Source: Mytilus trossulus
Lineage: Eukaryota
Reading direction: 5' to 3'
Length of the DNA: 64,000 nucleotides
Assembly: GCF_036588685.1 (NCBI RefSeq)
Contig: NC_086383.1
Coordinates: 17,794,001 to 17,858,000 of the forward strand
Below are positions 12,781 through 51,669 of this stretch, in pieces (within the stretch, counting starts at the first letter, position 1; each line of letters begins with the position of its first letter). The notes beneath the pieces are model-generated. The model searched no databases. It saw only the letters and a program-made list of their open reading frames with translations, and was not told the origin of the DNA. The translations under genes and the position numbers were made by a program.

Positions 12781-14125
12781 ATATTGCATTGCAATAAGAC
12801 AATCTTATAAAAGTGATTTTATATTTTCAAGAATAAAAGATCAAATGATATGCATATGCCACAACTGTCATTGAAAGAAGGATAATCTCTTAATATTTCA
12901 TTATTTTGTCTGGAAGAGAAATATGTTAATTTTAATATATTCTAATTTTCTACATGATTTTCTGTATTTCTATACAACAAGACACAATTGCTTATATTAT
13001 TTGTGTTATTTGAGTTTACTTCATGGATTGAAAGTTATTGGCATTTTAAAGGTACATGTTTTAACCGACATTTACAATATAAACATTTTTTTATTAAACA
13101 TATACCTATATTTGCACGTCTCAATAAATACTTACATGAAAGAAACATTGACCTTACGTTGTCGTAGAGAAATTATGTTGTCCTACTTAGTATAAAGAGT
13201 TATGGTATAATTTCTTTCCATAACGCTTTTATGTTTGATTTTAGTTCTATTATATTATTTTTAATTTCTTTAAATTAAAAGTAGAATTACTTATTTTTGA
13301 AATGAAGATTAATTTCAACAAAATATATAAATTACATAGAACGTTTTTTTAACACAAATAACACTTTAAAAAAGGGAAAAAAAGACATTATTTTCAAAAC
13401 ATTTTTATGTTTGAACGATGAATGTATCTGTTTTATGATAAGCTCTAAGACAAAATTTTAAACCCTATATACAAAAAAAAAAATGCGGTATGATTGCCAA
13501 TGAGACAACTATCCACAAAAGACCAAACATGTTTCTTTGAGAAAATCTAATTTTTGTTACCAATTGACAATAATGATAATTTTTGGTGCTTTAAGATAAC
13601 ATAAAATTGAGAATGGAAATGGGGAATGTGTCAAAGAGACAACAACCCGACCAAAATAAAAAAACACAACAGCAGAAGGTCACCAACAGGTCTTCAATGT
13701 AGCGAGAAATTCCCGCACCCGGAGGCGTCCTTCAGCTGGCCCCTAAACAAATATATACTAGTTCAGTGATAATGAACGCCATACTAATTTCCAAATTGTA
13801 CACAAGAAACTAAAATTTAAATAATACAAGACTAACAAAGGCCAGAGGCTCCTGACTTGGGACAGGCGCAAAAATGCGGCGGGGTTAAACATGTTTGTGA
13901 GATCTCAACCCTCCCCCTATACCTCTAACCAGTGTAGAAAAGTTAAAGCATAACAATACGCACATTAAAATTCAGTCCAAGAGAAGTCCGAGTCTGATGT
14001 CAGAAGATGTAACCAAAGAAAATAAACAAAATGACAATAATACATAAATAACAACAGACTACTAGCAGTTAACTGACATGCCAGCTCCAGACTTCAATTA
14101 AACTGACTGAAAGATTATGATTTCA

Positions 14126-14192
14126 TCATATGAACATCAGGCACAATCCTTCCCGTAAGGGGTTTAGTATCATACCATCATAACATATATGA
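14126..14192 (-). ncRNA. SECIS element (type 2) in the 3' UTR of the retroelement
   Basis: Sense strand reads UCAUAU AUGUU AUGAU GGUAUGAUACU AAA CCC CUUAC GGG A AGGAUUGUGCC UGAU GUUC AUAUGA. This gives helix I, the AUGA/GA non-Watson-Crick core, an 11-bp helix II (1 mismatch), unpaired AAA and an apical mini-stem. Confidence 0.85.
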
Positions 14193-14242
14193 GAAGAACA
14201 TAACCCGTGTCATGCCAACAACTGTTATTAGAATAAATGTGT

Positions 14243-17200
14243 TTAGTTCCGACGCAAAGACCTTATCAGTGACTCAATATTAACGCCAAAATATGCAATC
14301 TTTAATGACTTGACAACAGTATCGTAATTATATCCCTTCTTAATAAGTCTATTCAAAGGTTTTGTAAGTTTATGAGGTGAATACTGACACCTTTGTGCTT
14401 TATAAAGAATATTTCCATAAAAAATTGGATGTGAAATACCTGAACGTATAAAAAGTCTGCATGTTGAGCTATATTTACGAATGATGTCTTTATACCGATG
14501 ATAAAATTTAGTAAATGTTTTGACTAGTTTGTGATATCGAAAACCCTGGTGTAATAATTTTTCAGTAATACACAAATTTCTCTCGTTAAAATCTAAAACA
14601 TTGTTACATACACGAGCGAATCGTACAAGTTGAGATATATAAACACCGTAAGATGGTGACAAGGGAACGTCACCATCTAAAAACGGATAATTAACGATAG
14701 GAAATGAAAAATCATCCCTTTTATCATAAATTTTAGTATTCAGCTTTCCGTTAGTGATATAGATATCAAGATCGAGGAAAGGGCAGTGGTCATTGTTAGT
14801 ATTAGCTTTATTTAAAGTGAGTTCACCAGGATAAATTTCATTAATATACATACTGAAGTCGTCATTATTGAGAACCAAAATATCATCCAAATATCTAAAA
14901 GTATTATTAAATTTGTTTATCAGATGTTGTTTTGATGGGTCTTTGCTTATTTTTGTCATAAATTGTAACTCGTAACAATACAAAAAGAGGTCCGCAATAA
15001 GTGGTGCACAGTTAGTCCCCATTGGAATTCCGATAATCTGACGATATACGGAATCCCCAAAGCGAACAAAAATGTTATCTAGTAAAAATTCAAGGGCATA
15101 TATAGTATCAAAACATGTCCAATTAACATAGTTTTTTTGTTTATTGCTACTAAAAAATGACCTAAAAGAGTTTGAACATATATATTCACATTCTGATTTT
15201 TTGAATGCCCATTTAATTAGATGTGTGAATTTTTTCTTAATGAGAATGTGAGGCAATGTGGTATACAGGGTAGAAAAATCAAAACTTTGAACAGATTCAA
15301 AATCACCAATATAAGCATGCAATTTATCAAGTACTTCCAACGAGTTCTTGACACTCCAAAAGTAATTTATTCCACTATTTTCGAAGGCCTTATTTGAACA
15401 ATTTATTATAAGGTTTTTAATTGTACCAAGTGTGCTGGTAAGAATAATAGACAATTTAGTAGTTGAACAATGGCTTGAAGACGAAATAAATCTATATTTG
15501 TAAGGGGTTTTGTGTAGCTTCGGAAGCCAATACATAGTTGGAACTTTCATTGTATTTGGCTCTGCTTGTAAAGCGGTGGCTAAAAGTTTATGTTTGTTAC
15601 AGATTTCGTTTTCTGAAAATGGAGTCAGTTGGAATGTTGGTGAATTGGTGATTTCCTTTTTCAGAACCTCGATGTAAAATTTACGTCAAACAATAATAAT
15701 ATTATTAGCAGCTTTATCGGCCGGGACAAAAACAAATTCCTTGGCTAGTTCTTTTAGTTTATGTTTGATACGAGAAATAGGTTTATTGTGGTTATTGTTA
15801 ATAGTAAAATGTTCTTTAAAATGTTGAATACGTATATCAACTATCTTCATTACTGAATTAAAAAAAGAGTCCAAAGATTTTTTGTCAGCTTTTTCCCGTT
15901 TTATCCATTTCATACAGTAAGTAAGGAGTGAGTCGTGGATGATATTACGACACTCATTCCAATTAATAATTGACGGGGGACGATATTTAGGTCCTTTACT
16001 GAGAAATGATTTTAACTCTCGGTCTTGAACGATGTTAAGATCTCCCGTTATAACATGGGAAATGGGTCCATAAATATATTCGGAATAACTGCAATTACAT
16101 GAAGTAGGTGTATTTTCACTGATATTAACATCTTTACACAATTGACTATAATTAAACACAAATTTCCGGGTAGATTTCTTGTAAATATAACAAATAAGAG
16201 GTAGCTCAGTATTGTCAAAATATCCAGGAATTTGTTCTTTAACAGAATGGTCGTTAAATATACCGGCAATATTTACAAAATCAAAGCCTTTGTTGACATA
16301 CTTAGTTTTAATAAAATGTTTTTTATGATCTTCAGGGCGATCAATTTTGGGAAATAATTTAGAATAACAATATGCCATAATAATTTGAACAATTTCATAC
16401 TTAGGACTGCTATATGAAATTGTGTTGCAATCCTCCAAAATTTTATTTAACTTATTAACCGGTAACGAACAGAGTTTTGTTAACAGATAATGTCTGCCGT
16501 TGTTTTTTTAAATAGAAATAAGGTCCGAAATATTGGTATGATTGGCCCGAAATTTTCTTTGATTGCGATTTGTTCTACAACCGTGAGAACGGTTTTTACG
16601 AACAGTTTTAGAAACAATATCCAAAATGTTAACGGAATTGGTTCTAGATATATTACCAATTCCCATGATATTATCATTTAGACCGAGAGGGTAAACTGTC
16701 TGTAATTTTTTAATCCAATTTAATTCAATTATTTTCCGTGATCGTACAAACTTTGAATGCGATTCACCAGGCTGCTTATTTACTACTTCTAAAGGTTGAA
16801 CTGCTAAATATTTAAAAGGATGGTTGTGCTTCTTAAGGTGTTGGTAAATGATACTTTTGAATTTATTAGGTCTTTCAAAACGATACAGATGTTCTTGAGT
16901 GCGTTTTGATAAATATCTTCCAGTTTCTCCTACGTACTGAATACCACATCCCGGTTTGTTTCATGTGAGTAAATAAATAATACTGTTTGTTTTTCAAGTA
17001 ATATCAGTTTCAAAATTTAAAGAAAATGTGCGACCATTAAACGTGGACCTTACCGTATTGTTGGTGGAAAGACGGGGACATGTAAGTCATTTTTTGGCAT
17101 GACACTTATCGATAGAAGGGTAACCACGATTTTTATTGTTAAAAATGTTAGCGATGGTAGTATTTTTAGATAACCGATTTTGAAAATTGAGACGTGTAGA

Positions 17201-17251
17201 TACCCTTTGAACAAGTTTAGTATTTAGTATTTTTCCGTTTCTTAGTTTCAT
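14243..17251 (-). CDS. GIY-YIG endonuclease-reverse transcriptase polyprotein, 1002 codons, with 4 in-frame TGA (putative selenocysteine) and 1 premature TAA
   Basis: Translated manually from ATG 17251 (MKLRNGK...) to TAA 14243 with no frameshift. TGA at 17087-17089, 16994-16996, 16961-16963 and 15686-15688 (codons 55, 86, 97, 522); TAA at 16508-16510 (codon 248). ORF-track ORFs 14243-15550 and 15686-16438 are in this same frame. Confidence 0.88.
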
Positions 17252-19028
17252 AATTGTTTTGTTAGTGAATTACATAATAAAGGAGCAAAGATTGGCGTCC
17301 AGAATATGAACCAGCATACAATAATTAAGTTAAGTAAAAGTGATAAATTTGTTCGGCTGAAAATGTCGAACGCTATCAGTATTAATTACCCGAAAAAGAT
17401 AGTGTATATCAGGGTATGACTGATGGCTGACCAATTAGTAGAATGGGGCTGAATATTGAAATACTACTTTTTGATAAACATTCCTAAAGTAATGAACTAG
17501 AGAAGTTCTCGCTCGGACACACACTCCATAATCTAAGCATACTTTCTGTAAGACGATAAAAAAAAATACACGGATGCGTGAAAATCCCAAATAACCGAAA
17601 TCATCCGCGTCCATTCCTTCTCACCCCCTGTCCATAAAAAAAAACATAAATAAAGGATTCAATAGATTTCTATTGGTCTTTTTAAACATAGTGGTAATGA
17701 ATTGCTATTTTTAAACAGAAAAATCACTAGATATGACATATTTAGAAAAAAACAAAGATTATTACGAAAACTAAAAAAAAATCATTTGTATGTCTACGAA
17801 AGTCGTAATAACAATATTTAATGAATATAGACCAATTATGTGTTCGTGTAAATGTATACATACAGGAAAGAAACGTTGAACTCAGGGAAAGCATGTTGTC
17901 GTACTACGTATAACACTTTCTGATACATATTTTCTTCAAACATCACAGAACTAATTTTTTGCTTGATTTCTGTTATTTTAAAGCTCTTTGATTTATAATA
18001 CATATGACCAATTATTGTATTGCTTACCAACTTGTATCGGATTTCCAAATGTCTTATCTCAATCCATGTACGAAGATTTATTTTTGCTAAATATATAAAT
18101 TGCCATTTGATCAATATCGTTTCACCAAACAATTTTTGCCACAAATAACCCTTTTAAAAAAGGAAAAAGGACAATATTTTCAAAACATTATTTCATTTGA
18201 ACTCCGTAAAGTTAATCTCTTTGACAAAATTTCAAACCAAAGTGTTTTTCTAGACAAAATAATTTTGTATACCAAGACATAAATAAGTCTCTTAAATCTA
18301 ATATGCTAACACTAGCAGTCCCCGAAGAGATCAGGCGTATCTTGTAAGAAGTAAATACACAATATGGTACACATTGTTAATAATAATGGCCCTATATTAA
18401 TTCTTGTAAACTGGATCAGAATGATGCGTGAGAATCTTGGATAACAGCAAACACCATGTTCCCTCACCAACCCAAACAACAATAATTCAGATTTAACAGA
18501 GTGGTATATTAAAGATATGGGAGATGAATACTTTTTGGACAGGACAGGATTACTCGAAGTAAAACATGATTAGACATATCTGAAAAAATCTTTTGAAAGC
18601 ATACAAGGATTTGTTTGGTTTATATCGATGAAATCCTAAATGCCAATTCAGAGGACATGCCAATACTGTCATTGAAACGCAAGTTAACAAGTTCATTTCA
18701 ATTTATTTGTGTTTGTCAAAAGAGACCACATGTTGTTGGTTTTTTTAATATATTCTTAACTTTTACATTTGTCTGCACTTTCGTATAACAATACTCTTAC
18801 TTTCTTACTTGTTCGCCAATTTACAATTTATTTATAGATTAACAGTCATTGAAAGTCAACAAAAAACATGTTTAATACGACACCTGCTATAACAATATGT
18901 TTTAATTTGTACACATTTGAACAACAATGACGAAACGTTAAGTCAATCCGTACATACAATTAGAGTTATACATTCCCTGATTGGTGAAGATTTCAAAATA
19001 TGCAATATAGCAATGGTCGGATCCGTAT

Positions 19029-24172: not shown

Positions 24173-25847
24173 TAAAATTAAGAATGAAAACAAAACAGGG
24201 AATGTATCAAAGCGACAACAACCCAACCATAGAGCAGACACAAGCAGAAGGACACTAGTGGGTCGTCAATGTAGCGAGAAACTCACTCATCTTGAGGCGT
24301 CATGCAGATGGCCCCTTAACAAATATGTATACTAGTTCAGTAATAATGGACGTTATACTAAACTCCGAATTATACACAGGAAACTAAAATTAAAAGCATG
24401 CAAGACTAATGAAGGTTAAAGGCTCCTGAATTGGAGCAGTCGCAAAATTGCGGCGGGGTTAAACATTATTTTGAGATTTCAACCCTCCACCTTTAACTCT
24501 AGCCAATGTAGAAAAAAAAAGCACAACAATACGCACAGTACAAATCAGTTTAAGAGATGTCCGAGTCCGATGTCAGAATATGAAACAAAGAAATATAAAC
24601 AAAACGACAATATTACATAAATTACAACAGACTACTAGCAGTTACTGACATGCCAGCTCCAGACCTCAATTAAACTGATTGAAGATTATGTCTTCATTAC
24701 ATGTATATGCACATCAGACACAATTCCTCCTGTTAAGTGTTTACTAGTATACCATCATGAAATTTATGGGAAGAACATAACCCGTGCCAACAACTGGTTT
24801 TAGAATAAATGTGATTAATGTTGATGCAAAGATCCTATAAGTGAATCAATATTCAAGCCAATTTGAAAATACGCAATCTTTAATGACCTGACAACAGTAT
24901 CATAAATGTATCCCTTCTTAATAAGTCTGTTTTAATGTTGTCTTTGGTTTTGCGGTGAATACTGACATTATTGTGATTTGTAAAGATAAATACCATAAAA
25001 GATTAGAAGTGAAATACATAAACGTAAAAGTCGTCAACATGTTGAGTTTAATTTACGAGGATCATTTCCTTATACTGATAATAACATTTTGTAAATGTTT
25101 TGACTATCGTAATCCTGGTGTAATAATTTTCCAGTAATAAATCAATTTAACTCGCTGAAATTTAATACGTTGTTACATACACGACCGAATCGTACAAGAT
25201 GAGATATATAAACACCGTAAGATGATGACAAGGGAACGTCACCATCTAAAAATGGATAATTAACGATAGGAAATAAAAAAAAACAACATCTCTTTTATCA
25301 TAAATTGTTGTATTGGGCTCCCCGTTAATGTTACAGATATCGCGATGGAGGAAAGAGCAGTGGTCATTGTTAGTATTAGTTTTATTTAAAGTAAGTTCAA
25401 CAGGATACATTTGTTTAGTATGCATACTGAAGTCATCATTATTGAGAGCCAATATATCATGCAAATATCTAAAAGTTTTGTTAACTTTTTGTCTTTGCTG
25501 ATTTTAGTCATAACAATACAAAAACAGGTTCGGAATAAGTTGTGCACAGTTCCTTCCATTTGAATTTCGATAACTTGACGATATACGGAATCTCAAATGG
25601 AACAAACATATTATCAAGTAAAAAAATCAAACGCAGTTATAGTATCAAACCATGTCCAGTTGACATAGTTCTTTGTTTGTTACTTCTTAAAAATGACCTA
25701 AATGAGTTTGGACATATGTATTCACATTCTGACTTTTTAAATGCTTTATTAATTAGGAATGTGATTTTTCTTTCATAAGAAAATGAGGCAAAGTGGTATG
25801 AAGGGTAGAAAAATCAGAACTTTGAACAGATTTAAACTCACCAATAT
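24173..25847 (-). mobile_element. 5'-truncated, decayed copy of the same Naiad-type family (3' UTR plus RT C-terminal half)
   Basis: Colinear with 13602-15312, with many indels. Peptide DILALNNDDFSMHTKQMYPVELTLNK matches the intact RT. Confidence 0.9.
24705..24768 (-). ncRNA. Degenerate SECIS in the second Naiad copy
   Basis: Sense AUGAU GGUAUACUAGU AAA ... AGGAAUUGUGUC UGAU. Core and AAA retained, helix partly eroded. Confidence 0.55.
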
Positions 25848-28829: not shown

Positions 28830-29190
28830 TTTTATTGTACGTTCTTATGTTGTACTGTTATAACACTGTCCCAGATTAGGGGGAGGGTTGGGATCCCGCT
28901 AACATGTTTAACCCCGCCACATTATTTATGTGTGTGCCTGTCCTTAGTCAGGAGGCTTTAAATTCAGTGATTGTCGTTTGTTTATGTGTTACATATTTCT
29001 TTTTATTTCATTTTCGTTACATACATAAGGCCGTTAGTTTTTATCGGGGTCTGTTATAGCTGACTATGCGGTATGTGCTTGGCTCATTCCTGAAGGCCGT
29101 ATGGTGATATATAGTTGTTACTGTTTGTGTCATTTTGGTCTGTTGCTGATAGTTGTCTCATTGGAAATCATACCATATCGTCTTTTTATA
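28830..29190 (+). repeat. Dispersed repeat (PLE 3'-end-like family); other copies at 1-200, 45325-45631, 48775-49048, 63280-63470
   Basis: Shared tagttgtctcattgg(c/a)aatcatacca end and tttaaccccgccac / gcctgtcc..agtcagga module. Confidence 0.8.
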
Positions 29191-31118: not shown

Positions 31119-31427
31119 GTTAGAAGACGTTATTTTTAAAATGAAATGATTTAACCTCGAATTGATTATAATCACTAACAATTTTACAGTAGGAAAACAA
31201 ATATAATCATTGAGAATTTGAAACCTTTCTCAATTCGTGTTGTTTCACCTAAGATTTAAATCTGCCACACAGATAATAATTGTTAGTTTGATGTTTGTTG
31301 GTTTTGTGAAAATCTTTTTTTATTCACATTTTTTTTATATTGCTAAATAGCTTCTTTGTGGAATAAACACGCCAACATACATATCAGCCATTTTTTCAAT
31401 GACTATTGAAATTGAGAATGGAAATAT

Positions 31428-31570
31428 GGAATATGTCAAGGAGATAAAAATTCGGCCGAGAGCAAAACAGACCAGAATGTCACAAATAGGTCTTCAACAT
31501 AGCGGGATATTCTGCACCCAAAATCGTGCTTCAGATGGCCCCTTAATACAATTGCGTACTAGTTCAGTGA
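31428..31570 (-). repeat. Short 3'-end fragment of the Naiad family; other fragments at 38553-38752, 46800-46878, 51038-51317
   Basis: Matches 13603-13770 (aaattgagaatggaaat...actagttcagtgataa). Confidence 0.8.
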
Positions 31571-31686
31571 TAAGTTTTTGTTTGTGTTTGTATTTTTTGT
31601 TTTTTTAGTTATGTATTTGTATTACTCAATGTCAACTCTGTACTATTAACTATTATTATTTTGTTTATTGTTAAGTACATACATTA

Positions 31687-38200: not shown

Positions 38201-39348
38201 TTCAGCGGTCATGAGCAAAATGTCCGTGTTGAAGGACGTACCTTGACCTATAATGGTTAACTTTTATAAATTGTAACTTGGATGGAGAGGTGTCTCATTG
38301 GCACTCATACCACATTTTCCTGTATCCATTATATTTGTTTTATGGCAGGTTATTGTTTCGTTCTTACTAAATTCTTTTGAAACTTTCTCGACTTGGCCTG
38401 GAACTAATAAGAGCCTGGAATATAGTGCGGAATAAACTATTGTCTTAAATATTTCTGTTGTTAGTTGATGTCTCGTTGACGTAACAATCATCTGTTATTC
38501 ATAACTAAAAAAAACACACAACTAAAATTATCTATGCTTGTGAAATGCAGACTGTAATTTTAGTTTCTTGTGTATAATTGAAATTGAGTATGGCATTAAT
38601 TATCACTGAACTAGTATATATATTTATTTGGGGCCATATAAGGACGACTCCGTGTACGAAAATTCCCGCTGCATTGAAGACCTTCTTCTGGTGTCTGTTC
38701 TATGGTCGGGTTGTTGTCTTTTTGACACATTCCCCCTTTCCATTCTCTAATTATTTGTTTTGCTGAACGTTGCTCGGGTAGACGAACCGCTTTATTGGAT
38801 ATAGCTATAACATTGACTTCTTTATCATACCAGAATCAACAATTTAAATTACAAGAAAAAATTCGACCTATGAACGAAATGCAAATGAATATCAAACAGA
38901 CGCACATATAAAATTATCGTATATGCAAAACTAAATCACCATTATTTTTTCGAAAAAAAGAAAGGCATTGATAAAAAAAAACATCAAAGTTATAAAAATA
39001 AATCATTAAAATTTAAAGTAAAAGACATGCTGTAAATTGTTGAAATCAAATTAATATATCAAAACTGAACGAAAAGTGAGAAAAAACAAGGAATTAGTCA
39101 AAGAAACTTTGTATTTTACGTCCATGAAAGGTTTAAACGAAAGTTATAGAACTTATATTATCAAAATGTTATCAGAATTAGTTCTTGATATATCACGATT
39201 TTTTAAGATATCAGCAAATTAGTTTTGTATGTTTATTACATGGATTGAAAATATGAGACAAAAAGTTACGGAAGCCTTTAACAGCCATGTTAATTTATTT
39301 TTACAATTTGATATGACAAATGATTAATTTAATATAACAGATATATAA

Positions 39349-45169: not shown

Positions 45170-47176
45170 GTAAAGTTGTATGCTACATGTACCTGTAGGT
45201 CTGATTATATTTTAGAAGGAATATTGCTTCACTGATTTAAAATATCATATACATGTTATTGTTAAAAGCATCAGCATAAATAATTAACTTCACAGAATTT
45301 ACGTCAAAAACTGGTTTTATAAAAAAGAAGATGTGGTATGATTGCCAATGAGACAACTATCCACAAAAGACCAAAATGACACAGACATTAACAATTATAG
45401 GTCACTGTACGGCCTTCAGCAATGAGCAAAGCCCATACCGCATAGTCTGCTATAAAAGGCCCTGATAAGACAATGTAAAACCATTCAAACGAGAAAACTA
45501 ACGGCCTTATTTGTGTAAAAAATGAAAGAAAAAAACAAATATGTAACACATAAACAAAAGTACAACCACTGAATTACAGGCTCCTGACTTGGGACAGGCA
45601 TTTACATAAATAATGTGGCGGGGTTAAACATATACATTCCTAGGCTTTCTAACAAGCAGCTTGATGTAAATATATATAAAATATGTATTGTCCCAAAATA
45701 TCAAATAAATTTGTACAATGTACTAGGCTAAGACATCTAAAATACGATGGGTGTATGGCTTTGCTGTATATCTCTTTAGAATCGATAACACAATGGTTGA
45801 TCATTGCGGTTTTGCTTTGTTTCTTCTCTTACCTATTCTAACATCGGTCTCGGACTTCTTTTAAACTAAGCATCGCTGTGTATTTTTTTATTCCACACTG
45901 GTTAAGGAAAATTATGACTAGGGTGAGACTCACAAAACTTGTTCAATCCTGCAAGCCTGTTTTAGTCGGGAACCCCTACCCTTATTCTTGTGTGTGTGTG
46001 TTTGGTTTTTATTTTATTTTGGTTTATCCGATGTTTCGGAGCTGACTTTGTCGATTATAGTTTGCTGGACAATTATACATTAACATGGGAGGCAGCTGAA
46101 GCCCACATGATGGTGCAGGATTTGCTCGTTATGTTAAGGATATATTTGTGGCTGTGTGTTTTTTTTCTCTTCTTTTGACGGGTTGTTAATTTTCTCTTTG
46201 ACAATTTCCCCGTTTCCCCGTTTGTATATTACAAATTATATTTTGAGGCAATGTATTCTATATAATAATATAGTCAACATACATGTATCTAAAGCAAAGA
46301 CTTGCGATACAGTAATGCATTGTTGCGAATGACACAAATTCTCAACATAAACAAATGACCTATTAACGAAAAAAAAAGACATCTTTAGGTCACCGTACGA
46401 CCTTAAACAATGAGTAAAACTCATACATCACAGCAAGCTATAGGGGACCCCGGTATGTATTTCTTTTTATATGTCAATTAAGATAGGAGTCGATTAAGAT
46501 ACAAGATACAAGATAAAAGTTAAATTATTAATCAATCATGGAGCCCAAAATTTTAGCTAAAATCAAAGGAATTATAAAATAAAGCACAATATATATATAT
46601 GATTAGAGTGATTTGAAGTCGATCGAACCTTTAAAGATCGGGGTTTGATCTCAACCTCGTTCGACTAGTTGTGTTGTCCTGTCTCACTTTGTTTGCAGTA
46701 CAAACAATTCCTAATTACAAGAAGTTAGTTATAATTTCGAATAAAGGAACGATGATCAGCAGTAAGGCAAACTAATAAAACAAAACGACATATAGTGGCA
46801 TTCGGCTGTTGTTTTCGCTATATATATGGTCGGGTTGTTGTCTCTTTGACACATTCCCCATATTTCCATTCTCAATTTCATATAACAGTTGATCATAATA
46901 AACTGTCAACACATAGTGACAAGCTCTTTACTAATAACTAACAAGGATCTTTAGTTAAGAAAACATTCTTAAAATTAAAAAAAAAACAAAAAAAAACGCT
47001 TCGAAACATTTAGGGAAGCTCGAAATTTGGGTCAGACAAATGGCAAAACGGTTAGTAAAACTGTTTTAAAAATTTCACACGCACACATTTAATTATTCAG
47101 CATTTTTGTTAAGTTACTACTGTCTAATACAAAATTAATCAACTACATGTAAATAGTGTACCTTCGATCTTTTTAG

Positions 47177-50424: not shown

Positions 50425-51669
50425 AACAATACGTTTAATATCGATCACTACATACGAAAAGGGGTGAGAATCGGAGACGGTCAAGGCTTGAATTATTCGA
50501 GTTACATATTAGATACAATTAGCAGTTATAAGTCAATTCAATAAAGATGTTTAATAAAACAGCTTGAACAAATATAATATGCAAAATATCTGCAAACAAA
50601 ATCTATGAATTAAAAAGAGGGAAAATAAAAACTGTTAAAGTCGCTATTTAATTTTTATTTTTTTTTAATTGTAGGGAATAGCGCAAAGTAAAGATCGGAA
50701 ATACTGTGATAAAATTTTCCTGAAAAAAATGAAACAAATCTGTTCAACAAGAAAGGGTTGGAGAAAAAGATCGTGCAAAAGATTTTCAAGGTTGTATTAT
50801 GTTGGTGTTTGTGCGGGCGGAAAATCATCATTTCGGCAGACTCCAAAAGCTGAATGTAGCGTACTAGACTGGATAGCCAGTTGTTTTCCGTAAATTAAAC
50901 ATAGTCTCTAGTTGCATGGTTAGATTATACTTTGTATTTGTCTGAAAAAAAATAAAGATATAAATAGTTTACTAGTATATATTTTGTTTTTTTCCTGAAC
51001 TAAAACCCGTGTCACAAGAGTGGCTCGCTTGTTGCACACCTGCCACAATTTTGCGCCTGTCCCAAGTCAGGAGCCTCTGTCCTCTGTAAGTCTTGTATTA
51101 TTTTAACTTTTAGTTTCTTGTGTAAAATTTGGAGATTAGTATGGCGTTCATTATCACTGAACTAGTATACGTATTGTTTAGGGGCCAGCTGAAAGACGCC
51201 TCTGGGTGCGGGAATTTCTCGCTGCATTGAAGACCTGTTGGTGACCTTCTGCTGTTATCTGCTATTTGGTCAGGTTGCTGTCCCTTTGACACATTCTCCA
51301 TTTCCATTCTCAATTTTGTGTTTGTAAAGTTTATTAACGCTCTGACAATTCAAGGGAAGAAACAATAGTTACAATCAATTGACTTTTATTCACTTTTTAA
51401 CTCGTTGTTTACTGTGATAGATGTTTTCTAGTACAGACAAAAGGGGCTATATAAACCAAAAGACAAAACTAAATTTAACAATAACCTCTAAACAACAAAT
51501 TATCGATTTATCGATTAAAAAGATTGATTGAATGTTCTTTGTTTCAAGTTCACCGGCGATCAGTCAAAAGTAAACTCCGAGGAAAATTCAAAACGAAAAG
51601 TTCAAATTCAAATAACAAAATCAGAATCTCAAACACATCAAACGATTGGATTACAACTGTCATATTCCT

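What the first reader, a model, noticed from the sequence alone, without database searches (positions are those of the whole stretch)
14243..17251. Retrotransposon polyprotein with four in-frame UGA codons at cysteine positions: a selfish selenoprotein
Seen: what the ORF track shows as broken pieces is one frame of 1002 codons with no frameshift. Four of the five internal stops are TGA, each where this protein family normally has Cys: KCHAKK-U-LTC, DIT-U-KTNSIIY, IIYLLT-U-NKPGC (just before QYVGET) and DKAANNIIIV-U-RKFY in the RT N-terminal region. Random decay in an AT-rich genome would give mostly TAA/TAG at arbitrary sites. Established: UGA plus a 3' UTR SECIS encodes selenocysteine in eukaryotes, and Sec-containing Naiad-type Penelope-like elements have been reported in marine invertebrates, so the phenomenon is known but this family may be uncatalogued. 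Inference: full-length EN-RT synthesis needs four recoding events, which would tie transposition to selenium supply.
Basis: partly seen in the sequence, partly recalled or inferred. Interest (0 to 1): 0.92.

Follow-up and report, generated by a model that had tools for sequence, protein, structure and literature searches.

The report
Selenocysteine-coding Naiad retrotransposon in a mussel
This is a copy of a jumping gene whose protein uses the rare amino acid selenocysteine at four cysteine positions; the kind was described in clams and spiders in 2021, and this is a new, recently active family of it, probably in a mussel.

Summary
On the minus strand, 17251->14243 is one 1002-codon frame with four in-frame TGA codons (55, 86, 97, 522) and one TAA (248). 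All four TGAs fall on columns where every aligned homologue has Cys.

A SECIS element lies 51 nt after the terminal TAA. All four TGAs are present in 30 of 30 genomic copies, whereas the TAA occurs only in this copy.

In 80 related marine-metagenome contigs, recurrent TGAs occur at only five columns: these four and the first Cys of the CxC motif. Each column holds only TGA or TGT/TGC. SECIS presence tracks TGA presence, with 28 of 30 Sec-type loci against 1 of 23 Cys-type loci. The SECIS helices covary. All Sec-type loci form one clade. dN/dS is about 0.1 in every segment between TGAs. The host genome has tRNA-Sec and SepSecS.

This is a selenoprotein-encoding Naiad Penelope-like element, a kind already published by Craig et al. 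2021 for clams and spiders. This family's Sec pattern matches none of their four families. The window copy itself is dead: it has the private TAA, lacks the first 82 bp of the unit and has no pLTR.

Other first-reader notes of this scan flag the same kind elsewhere in this genome. Sec insertion itself is inferred, not shown.

The parts
13601..17535 (-). The Naiad element copy, 3935 bp. The full unit is 4017 bp; this copy lacks the first 82 bp and has no upstream partial tandem copy (pLTR).
   Evidence: The ends are defined by where 29 other genomic copies stop aligning. A conserved 82-bp 5' piece and 4017-bp tandem spacing are seen in other loci.
17252..17535 (-). 5' untranslated part, truncated at its 5' end.
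   Evidence: An in-frame stop lies 7 codons before the ATG at 17251.
14243..17251 (-). Single ORF of 1002 codons plus TAA: N-terminal GIY-YIG endonuclease, linker with CxC motif, and reverse transcriptase.
   Evidence: 3228 homologues of the RT piece; 2716 homologues of the EN-linker piece.
17087..17089 (-). TGA codon 55: second Cys of the CX4CxxC zinc-finger-like motif (C50-x4-U55-x2-C58).
   Evidence: Cys in 35 of 35 aligned full-length homologues. TGA in 30 of 30 genomic copies. Among metagenome relatives, 7 TGA and 20 TGT/TGC, with nothing else.
16994..16996 (-). TGA codon 86: the conserved Cys just before the GIY-YIG motif.
   Evidence: Cys in 40 of 40. TGA in 30 of 30 copies. 17 TGA and 13 Cys codons in relatives.
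16961..16963 (-). TGA codon 97: first Cys of the CCHH motif inside the GIY-YIG core.
   Evidence: Cys in 41 of 41. TGA in 30 of 30 copies. 19 TGA and 11 Cys codons in relatives.
16652..17113 (-). GIY-YIG endonuclease domain with CX4UxxC and U/C-H-H motifs (approximate limits).
   Evidence: Alignment with full-length Naiad-type proteins. Motif definitions from PMC8557442 section 6.
16508..16510 (-). TAA nonsense codon 248, private to this copy. It kills the copy.
   Evidence: TCA in 29 of 29 other genomic copies. 16509 T>G in essentially all RNA and DNA reads of three other organism labels. The column is variable in homologues.
16091..16099 (-). CxC motif (C385-N-C387). It is Cys here, but its first Cys is a fifth TGA site in many relatives.
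   Evidence: Column 385 has 18 TGA and 31 TGT/TGC in relatives, with nothing else.
15710..15718 (-). DKA motif (D512-K513-A514), diagnostic of Naiads.
   Evidence: PMC8557442 section 6.
15686..15688 (-). TGA codon 522: the Cys eight residues after DKA.
   Evidence: Cys in 47 of 47. TGA in 30 of 30 copies. 35 TGA and 28 Cys codons in relatives. Seven database proteins end exactly one residue before it, and 88 start 2-60 residues after it.
14246..15685 (-). Reverse transcriptase and C-terminal part (codons 523-1002).
   Evidence: dN/dS 0.11 against the 93% relative.
14121..14195 (-). SECIS element: helix I, AUGA...GA core, 10-bp helix II, AAA, 3-bp apical mini-helix. It starts 51 nt after the TAA stop.
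   Evidence: Rfam SECIS_1 at 14127-14191: 32.8 bits (gathering score 35), E 0.0016. Family model R1: 74.6 bits. Covariation across 17 relatives.
13601..14242 (-). 3' untranslated region, 642 nt.
   Evidence: Reads show diverse AT-rich flanks beginning at 13601 (table 7).

Best explanation
The stretch is one copy of a young, high-copy family of Naiad-type Penelope-like retrotransposons. These carry an N-terminal GIY-YIG endonuclease, a CxC linker and a C-terminal reverse transcriptase.

The family's single ORF is a selenoprotein gene. Four structural cysteines are encoded by UGA: the second Cys of the CX4CxxC finger, the Cys before GIY-YIG, the first Cys of the CCHH finger and the Cys eight residues after DKA. 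A SECIS stem-loop 51 nt into the 3' UTR recruits the host's Sec machinery (SBP2, eEFSec, tRNA-Sec). Ribosomes then insert selenocysteine four times and make the full EN-RT protein.

Shown here: the four UGAs, their conservation, the Cys/UGA exchange, the SECIS and its covariation, purifying selection across every inter-UGA segment, and host tRNA-Sec and SepSecS genes. Inferred: actual Sec insertion, and any dependence of transposition on selenium.

This copy cannot make the protein. It has a private TAA at codon 248, lacks the first 82 bp of the unit and has no pLTR.
For: - Four TGAs fall at invariant Cys columns.
- 30 of 30 genomic copies at 99.4-100% identity keep them, and 25 of those 30 have no other in-frame stop.
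- At least 40 full-length copies at 99% identity or more, out of 4198 first-look candidates, show recent amplification of a four-TGA element.
- In 80 metagenome relatives, recurrent TGAs occupy only columns 55, 86, 97, 385 and 522, and each holds only TGA or TGT/TGC. There are 96 TGAs at these columns against 17 TGA and 21 TAA/TAG elsewhere.
- SECIS hits always lie on the sense strand, roughly 30-135 nt after the ORF end. They occur in 28 of 30 Sec-type loci and 1 of 23 Cys-type loci (Fisher 1.3e-11).
- SECIS alignment: UGA, AAA and GAU are invariant, and 15 of 18 pairs show compensatory changes. 92% of cells are paired against 41-48% when the partners are slid; covariation score is 0.73 against 0.13-0.18.
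- All Sec/SECIS loci form one clade of 42 rows (SH-aLRT 100).
- dN/dS against the 93% relative is 0.05, 0, 0.10 and 0.11 for the four segments between TGAs, at dS 0.31.
- The host has two tRNA-Sec genes (79.6 and 77 bits, cut-off 47) and a multi-exon SepSecS gene.
- RNA reads cover the element.
- The same architecture and two of the same Sec sites are published for Naiads (PMC8557442).
Against: - No protein-level evidence. Sec insertion, its efficiency over four UGAs up to 2.9 kb from the SECIS, and any activity of the product are untested.
- The window SECIS scores 32.8 bits, just under Rfam's gathering score of 35.
- The SECIS sequences used for the covariation count were picked by a structure-aware model, which inflates the share of paired cells.
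- The genomic copies are so alike that their shared TGAs are one inheritance, not 30 tests.
- Loci in the SECIS/TGA table are related to one another, so Fisher's p overstates independence.
- The RNA reads lie on both strands and are strongly 3'-biased, as expected from truncated copies inside host transcripts. They do not prove a full-length sense mRNA.
Confidence: 0.9

Rival explanations
1. The TGAs are ordinary leaky stops: programmed termination or readthrough without selenocysteine, as in retroviral gag-pol. They would set the ratio of short N-terminal products to full-length EN-RT.
For: Retroelements often use stop-codon readthrough (established knowledge). Four stops in series would give strong attenuation. 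No protein data exclude it.
Against: Readthrough stops need not sit on cysteines. Here all five recurrent TGA columns alternate only with TGT/TGC. A covarying SECIS accompanies the TGAs and is absent from Cys-only relatives. TAA and TAG never recur at these sites. Products ending at codons 55, 86 or 97 would be fragments without a complete domain.
Confidence: 0.04
2. The family is non-autonomous. The TGAs truncate the protein, and the copies spread only because a Cys-coding Naiad supplies EN-RT in trans. The SECIS-like hairpin would be a conserved 3' recognition structure for that RT.
For: This genome holds other Naiad families. RTs often recognise 3' structures (established knowledge).
Against: dN/dS of about 0.1 in every inter-TGA segment shows selection on the whole frame. 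The other young family found in this genome (L035 type) also has TGAs, five of them. The TGA pattern persists across lineages with saturated dS. Rfam's general SECIS_1 model, not only the family model, finds the hairpin.
Confidence: 0.03
3. The copy is a decayed pseudogene whose TGAs arose by chance.
For: This copy does carry one genuine inactivating mutation, the TAA at codon 248, and a 5' truncation.
Against: The TGAs are shared by all copies and by relatives down to 46% protein identity, always at Cys columns. Chance is about 2e-5 for this ORF alone.
Confidence: 0.01

Closest known systems
Naiad_Mmer and Naiad_Scon, the selenoprotein-encoding Naiads of the clams Mercenaria mercenaria and Sinonovacula constricta (Craig et al. 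2021, PMC8557442)
   Same: N-terminal GIY-YIG EN followed by RT. UGA at the Cys before GIY-YIG, at the first Cys of CCHH and at the Cys eight residues after DKA. A SECIS just after a UAA/UAG stop. Bivalve host. High copy number.
   Different: This family has a fourth UGA at the second Cys of the CX4CxxC finger, which the paper reports only for a spider family. It has none at the RT6(D) site of Naiad_Scon. Its SECIS is 51 nt after the stop (published: 1-21 nt, or overlapping the stop). It folds with an apical mini-helix (type-2-like), whereas the paper reports type I. The host is probably a mussel, for which the paper reports no Sec family.
Naiad_Sdum and Naiad_Smim, the selenoprotein-encoding Naiads of Stegodyphus spiders (same paper)
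   Same: UGA within the CX2-5CxxC finger, before GIY-YIG and after DKA; three or four Sec residues.
   Different: In the spider families the first Cys (Smim), or the first and second (Sdum), of the finger is Sec, and the CCHH Cys is not. Here only the second finger Cys is Sec and the CCHH Cys is Sec. The paper says chelicerate Naiads lack the IFD insertion. It infers an independent origin in spiders.
Cys-type Naiads of bivalves (e.g. the extended Penelope-2_CGi of oysters, same paper)
   Same: Same domain order and motifs: CX2-5CxxC, CCHH, KR-rich block, CxC, GxKF/Y and DKA. Partial-tandem pLTR structure. No canonical hammerhead.
   Different: They encode Cys at all five sites and have no SECIS. 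The Cys-only relatives sampled here are 33-46% identical in protein and gave no SECIS hit.
Selenoprotein P
   Same: One of the few eukaryotic proteins with several Sec residues decoded processively from a 3'-UTR SECIS. It is Sec-rich in bivalves (Baclaocos et al. 2019, as cited in PMC8557442).
   Different: An unrelated host gene. It usually has two SECIS elements, and its Sec residues serve selenium transport rather than replacing metal-binding cysteines of an enzyme.

Membership tests
Naiad clade of Penelope-like elements (N-terminal EN+ PLEs) | GIY-YIG endonuclease N-terminal to the RT in one ORF | tested here: met
   IIY...QYVGET core at codons 92-110, with the RT motifs downstream. It aligns over its full length with 47 proteins of 820-1279 aa that have the same order.
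Naiad clade of Penelope-like elements (N-terminal EN+ PLEs) | CX2-5CxxC finger upstream of GIY-YIG, and a CCHH motif with two Cys inside the GIY-YIG core | tested here: met
   C50-x4-U55-x2-C58, and U97 with the Cys six residues later. Columns 55, 58 and 97 are conserved in the homologues; UGA takes the place of Cys at 55 and 97.
Naiad clade of Penelope-like elements (N-terminal EN+ PLEs) | CxC motif, GxKF/Y motif, and DKA instead of DKG | tested here: met
   TSCNCS at 383-388, SKGPKYRP, and PADKAANN at 510-517.
Naiad clade of Penelope-like elements (N-terminal EN+ PLEs) | IFD-like insertion between RT3(A) and RT4(B), absent in chelicerate Naiads | tested here: inconclusive
   About 80 residues separate the FDFS Asp from GIPMG. 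No canonical PLE was aligned for comparison.
Naiad clade of Penelope-like elements (N-terminal EN+ PLEs) | Partial tandem copies forming pLTRs, 5' truncation, unit of 3.4-4.4 kb | tested here: met
   Unit of 4017 bp. Most of the 29 other loci have a 5'-truncated copy directly upstream. The window also holds several 3'-end fragments. The window copy itself has no pLTR.
Naiad clade of Penelope-like elements (N-terminal EN+ PLEs) | No canonical hammerhead ribozyme | tested here: met
   No hammerhead family among Rfam matches up to E 10 in 11000-19000, and none at gathering score in the whole window.
Naiad clade of Penelope-like elements (N-terminal EN+ PLEs) | Insertion bias for (TA)n microsatellites | tested here: inconclusive
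   The flanks of this copy are not (TA)n. Read ends at the 3' junction run into AT-rich, low-agreement sequence.
Selenoprotein-encoding Naiads (Craig et al. 2021) | In-frame UGA at the Cys before GIY-YIG and at the Cys eight residues after DKA (stated for all four published families) | tested here: met
   Codons 86 and 522.
Selenoprotein-encoding Naiads (Craig et al. 2021) | SECIS in the 3' UTR shortly after the first non-UGA stop | tested here: met
   SECIS_1 hit 51 nt after the TAA. It is conserved and covaries in relatives. SECISearch3 was not available.
Selenoprotein-encoding Naiads (Craig et al. 2021) | Identity with one of the four published families (Scon, Mmer, Sdum, Smim) | tested here: not met
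   By the paper's own description of Sec sites and SECIS position, this pattern fits none of the four. The sequences themselves (supplementary file S4) are not held, so no alignment was made.
Eukaryotic selenoprotein gene | Sec/Cys pairing: homologues with Cys at the UGA position | tested here: met
Eukaryotic selenoprotein gene | Host has the Sec machinery | tested here: met
   Two tRNA-Sec hits over the cut-off and a SepSecS gene in six ordered exon matches on contig C4. SBP2, eEFSec, PSTK and SPS2 were not searched.
Eukaryotic selenoprotein gene | Selenocysteine actually incorporated at the UGA codons | not testable with these tools
   Needs 75Se labelling, mass spectrometry, ribosome profiling or a reporter assay.

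The most novel reading that the evidence does not exclude
All SECIS-bearing Naiads sampled here descend from one SECIS acquisition. Since then, five structural cysteines have flipped between Cys and Sec at least 21 times: three in the endonuclease fingers, one in the CxC motif and one after DKA. This has produced families with one to five Sec residues. The CxC site and the five-Sec state are not in the published description.

Two such families, with four and five Sec, are both recently active in this one genome. If so, once a selfish gene owns a SECIS, Cys-to-Sec change becomes a one-step, frequently taken and possibly favoured move. That would make these elements a natural experiment on why Sec replaces Cys, and a mobile source of SECIS elements for host genes.
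Probability: 0.55. Interest if true: 0.65.

Novelty: new member of a known kind. Interest (0 to 1): 0.5.

Why it matters
Selenoprotein-coding transposons are known from a single paper with four families. This adds a very young family with at least 40 near-identical full-length copies, in what is probably a mussel, with a Sec pattern not described before.

The comparison made here suggests the trait is much wider than reported. It points to a whole clade with a shared SECIS and a mosaic of one to five Sec sites.

Two practical points follow. Gene callers and repeat annotators break these ORFs at UGA: thousands of database 'proteins' start or end exactly at the Sec codon. Thousands of dispersed 3' fragments carry SECIS elements that could land in host 3' UTRs.

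The family also offers a test of whether retrotransposition can depend on a trace element.

Tried and rejected
- Pfam scan of the four ORF pieces gave no significant family; only weak chance hits appeared.
- The MFE fold of the SECIS region alone is not exceptional (z -0.85). The evidence for structure comes from the covariance models and covariation, not from stability.
- Rfam found no SECIS in the older 81%-identity fragment at 24198-25847. The family model finds a weak one at 24698-24772 (28.1 bits) with the core motifs kept and the helix degraded.
I did not try to get them another way.
The DNA behind the database proteins P0001-P0270 could not be read, so stops at their ends are inferred from where they start and end.
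- The supplementary sequences of Craig et al. are not held.
- The protein atlas gave only generic eukaryotic PLE/RT clusters.
- Organism names of the sequencing runs are coded. 'Mussel' rests on other agents' notes, about 14 chromosome-sized contigs, 1.30 Gb and 32% GC. I did not verify it.
Stops were read through only as X, and no copy is singled out as intact.
Full report
**1. Observation**

The frame is on the minus strand. Window 17251->14243 reads as 1002 codons plus a terminal TAA, without a frameshift. The other two frames of that strand have 47 and 126 stops.

In an alignment with 47 full-length homologues of 820-1279 aa from a profile-free HMMER search, every residue aligned to the four TGA codons is Cys. 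Codon 248 falls in a variable column. Only 6.5% of the one-step nonsense paths in this ORF start from a Cys codon, so four of four by chance is about 2e-5.

**2. What the element is**

Comparison with 29 other copies from the same genome puts the copy's ends at 17535 (5') and 13601 (3'). The other copies share a further conserved 82 bp at the 5' end. Tandem copies are spaced 4017 bp apart, so the full unit is 4017 bp. Most loci have a 5'-truncated copy directly upstream, the pseudo-LTR arrangement of Penelope-like elements. The window copy has neither the 82 bp nor a pLTR.

The protein contains, in order:
- a CX4(C/U)xxC finger;
- a GIY-YIG core with the CCHH motif;
- a basic block;
- a CxC motif;
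- GPKY;
- DKA;
- a reverse transcriptase.

This is the diagnostic set given for Naiads by Craig et al. 2021 (PMC8557442). No hammerhead ribozyme was found.

**3. The TGAs belong to the family; the TAA does not**

All 30 genomic copies sampled (99.4-100% identical over 3.2 kb) have TGA at the four sites. Twenty-nine have TCA at codon 248, and 25 of the 30 have no other in-frame stop.

RNA reads and DNA contigs from three other organism labels read G at 16509, which gives TCA on the sense strand. No high-share difference was listed at the TGA codons, although 261 minor differences were not shown.

The 40 scored matches in the genome are all 99% identical or more, out of 4198 first-look candidates. 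An element with four TGAs has therefore amplified very recently. Because these copies are so alike, their TGAs count as one inheritance rather than 30 tests.

**4. Independent tests from divergent relatives**

A scan of metagenome contigs returned 80 loci with 33-99% protein identity. Each was read in frame with X at every stop.
- TGA recurs at only five columns: 55, 86, 97, 522, and 385 (the first Cys of the CxC motif).
- In each of these columns every locus has either TGA or TGT/TGC and nothing else.
- There are 96 TGAs at these columns, against 17 TGA and 21 TAA/TAG everywhere else.
- Sec patterns range from one site (CCCCU) to five (UUUUU). The window family is UUUCU.

In the protein databases, seven predicted proteins of 37-65% identity end exactly at DKA+7, and 88 start 2-60 residues after the site. 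This is what gene callers produce when they meet a stop there. The closest relatives that read through have Cys.

dN/dS between the window copy and a 93% relative is 0.05, 0, 0.10 and 0.11 for the four segments between TGAs, at dS 0.31. The whole frame, not just a piece of it, is under purifying selection.

**5. SECIS**

Rfam's SECIS_1 model hits 14191->14127, 51 nt after the TAA. The score is 32.8 bits against a gathering score of 35, with E 0.0016 in an 8-kb search.

The same model finds a hit on the sense strand just after the ORF in 22 relatives, all of the Sec type or lacking the informative sites. It finds none in the Cys-only loci.

An alignment of 17 of these has UGA, AAA and GAU invariant. 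The consensus fold is helix I, core, a 10-bp helix II, AAA and a 3-bp mini-helix. Fifteen of 18 pairs show compensatory changes. 92% of cells are paired against 41-48% when partners are slid, and the covariation score is 0.73 against 0.13-0.18. The caveat is that these sequences were chosen by a structure-aware model.

A family model built from the alignment finds 40 elements. Among loci with a usable 3' side, 28 of 30 Sec-type loci have a SECIS, against 1 of 23 Cys-type loci (Fisher 1.3e-11). The loci are related to one another, so this p value overstates independence. The one exception, L034, shows only the DKA+8 site.

**6. Phylogeny**

A tree was built from the RT part, which contains none of the five sites. 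All Sec/SECIS loci fall in one clade of 42 rows (SH-aLRT 100), nested among Cys-only Naiads. The minimum numbers of Cys/Sec changes are 2, 3, 3, 9 and 4 for the five sites. The direction of these changes was not established. This was a quick IQ-TREE search, and the rows are contigs of unknown host.

**7. Host**

The genome is 1.30 Gb with 32% GC. Hits fall mostly on about 14 large contigs. Other agents' notes on the same genome call it a mussel, which I did not verify.

It has two tRNA-Sec genes well over the cut-off and a multi-exon SepSecS gene. A second Sec-type family with five TGAs, represented by L035, is also present at about 100% identity in at least 40 copies. The L058 and L034 lineages are not in this genome.

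**8. Expression**

Two RNA-seq runs of one organism label cover the whole element. Coverage has a strong 3' excess and reads lie on both strands. In one run the 5' half is biased 3-8 fold to the orientation expected for sense RNA, if the library is of the usual stranded type. This shows transcription of family members but not a defined full-length mRNA.

**9. Mechanism**

*Shown:* an ORF interrupted only by UGA at structural Cys positions; a conserved, covarying SECIS in the 3' UTR; selection on the full frame; host Sec machinery genes.

*Inferred:* the SECIS recruits SBP2, eEFSec and Sec-tRNA, so that four UGAs, 1.5-2.9 kb upstream, are read as Sec and the EN-RT protein is completed. Transposition would then need selenium.

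Three of the four Sec residues lie in the two zinc-finger-like motifs of the endonuclease. What Sec contributes there is unknown.

The window copy is a dead member of the family. It has the TAA at codon 248, the 5' truncation and no pLTR.

**10. Comparison and novelty**

Selenoprotein-encoding Naiads are published for two clams and two spiders, with three or four UGAs. The published sites are the Cys before GIY-YIG, the DKA+8 Cys, the first CCHH Cys (clams), the first or second finger Cys (spiders) and one RT6(D) site. Their SECIS lies 1-21 nt after the stop.

This family shares the three clam sites and adds the second finger Cys. It lacks the RT6(D) site, and its SECIS is 51 nt downstream with a type-2-like apex. 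By that description it is none of the four. No later paper on the subject is in the held library.

It is therefore a new member of a known kind. Three points appear to go beyond the paper:
- the CxC Sec site;
- the five-Sec families;
- the single clade with repeated Cys/Sec exchange.

These rest on metagenome contigs of unknown host and on a quick tree.

**11. Limits**

- The paper's supplementary sequences are not held.
- Run organisms are coded.
Stops were read only as X, and no copy is singled out as intact.

Noticed in passing
window 24198-25847 (minus-sense): An older 5'-truncated Naiad fragment, 81-82% identical to the young family. It covers the RT C-terminus and the 3' UTR. Its SECIS homologue (24698-24772) keeps AUGA, AAA and UGAU, but helix II is degraded. 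Its subfamily gave 11523 first-look candidates in the genome.
   Followed up: partly
window 51039-51317, 38556-38752, 31409-31573, 46795-46878, 28877-28927: Short fragments matching only the last 50-280 bp of the element's 3' end (76-90% identity). This is the pile-up of 5'-truncated insertions typical of Penelope-like elements.
   Followed up: no
own genome, e.g. G000:C6:25320622-25323922 (represented by L035): A second Sec-type Naiad family, 62% protein identity to this one. It has five in-frame TGAs, adding the first Cys of the CxC motif. It is present in this genome in at least 40 copies at about 100% identity to the metagenome contig L035.
   Followed up: partly
proteins P0081, P0109, P0094, P0078: Some database homologues have Trp (TGG) at the DKA+8 position. 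Thousands of cluster members of the same family start just after that position instead. These are probably TGA-to-TGG mutant copies that let gene callers read on.
   Followed up: partly
G000:C10:63843916-63855579 and 64461689-64492367: Two long tandem arrays, with periods of about 891 and 900 bp, of an 81-nt tRNA-like sequence. Each unit scores 45.9 bits with the tRNA-Sec model, just under its cut-off. They are probably arrays of a long-variable-arm tRNA gene.
   Followed up: no
sequencing runs X1-X14: Runs under four different organism labels hold 80-86% of the element's 31-mers. Near-identical copies therefore occur in several closely related species or labels. This suggests shared recent activity, introgression or transfer within a species complex.
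   Followed up: no
window 13401-13545: The DNA just 3' of the element is itself a high-copy repeat: read depth is large, and reads share a loose end at 13527.
   Followed up: no
L060:394-471: In this metagenome contig a SECIS lies upstream of the ORF. It sits in the 3' end of a preceding partial tandem copy (pLTR), so transcripts that start in a pLTR would carry a SECIS at both ends.
   Followed up: no
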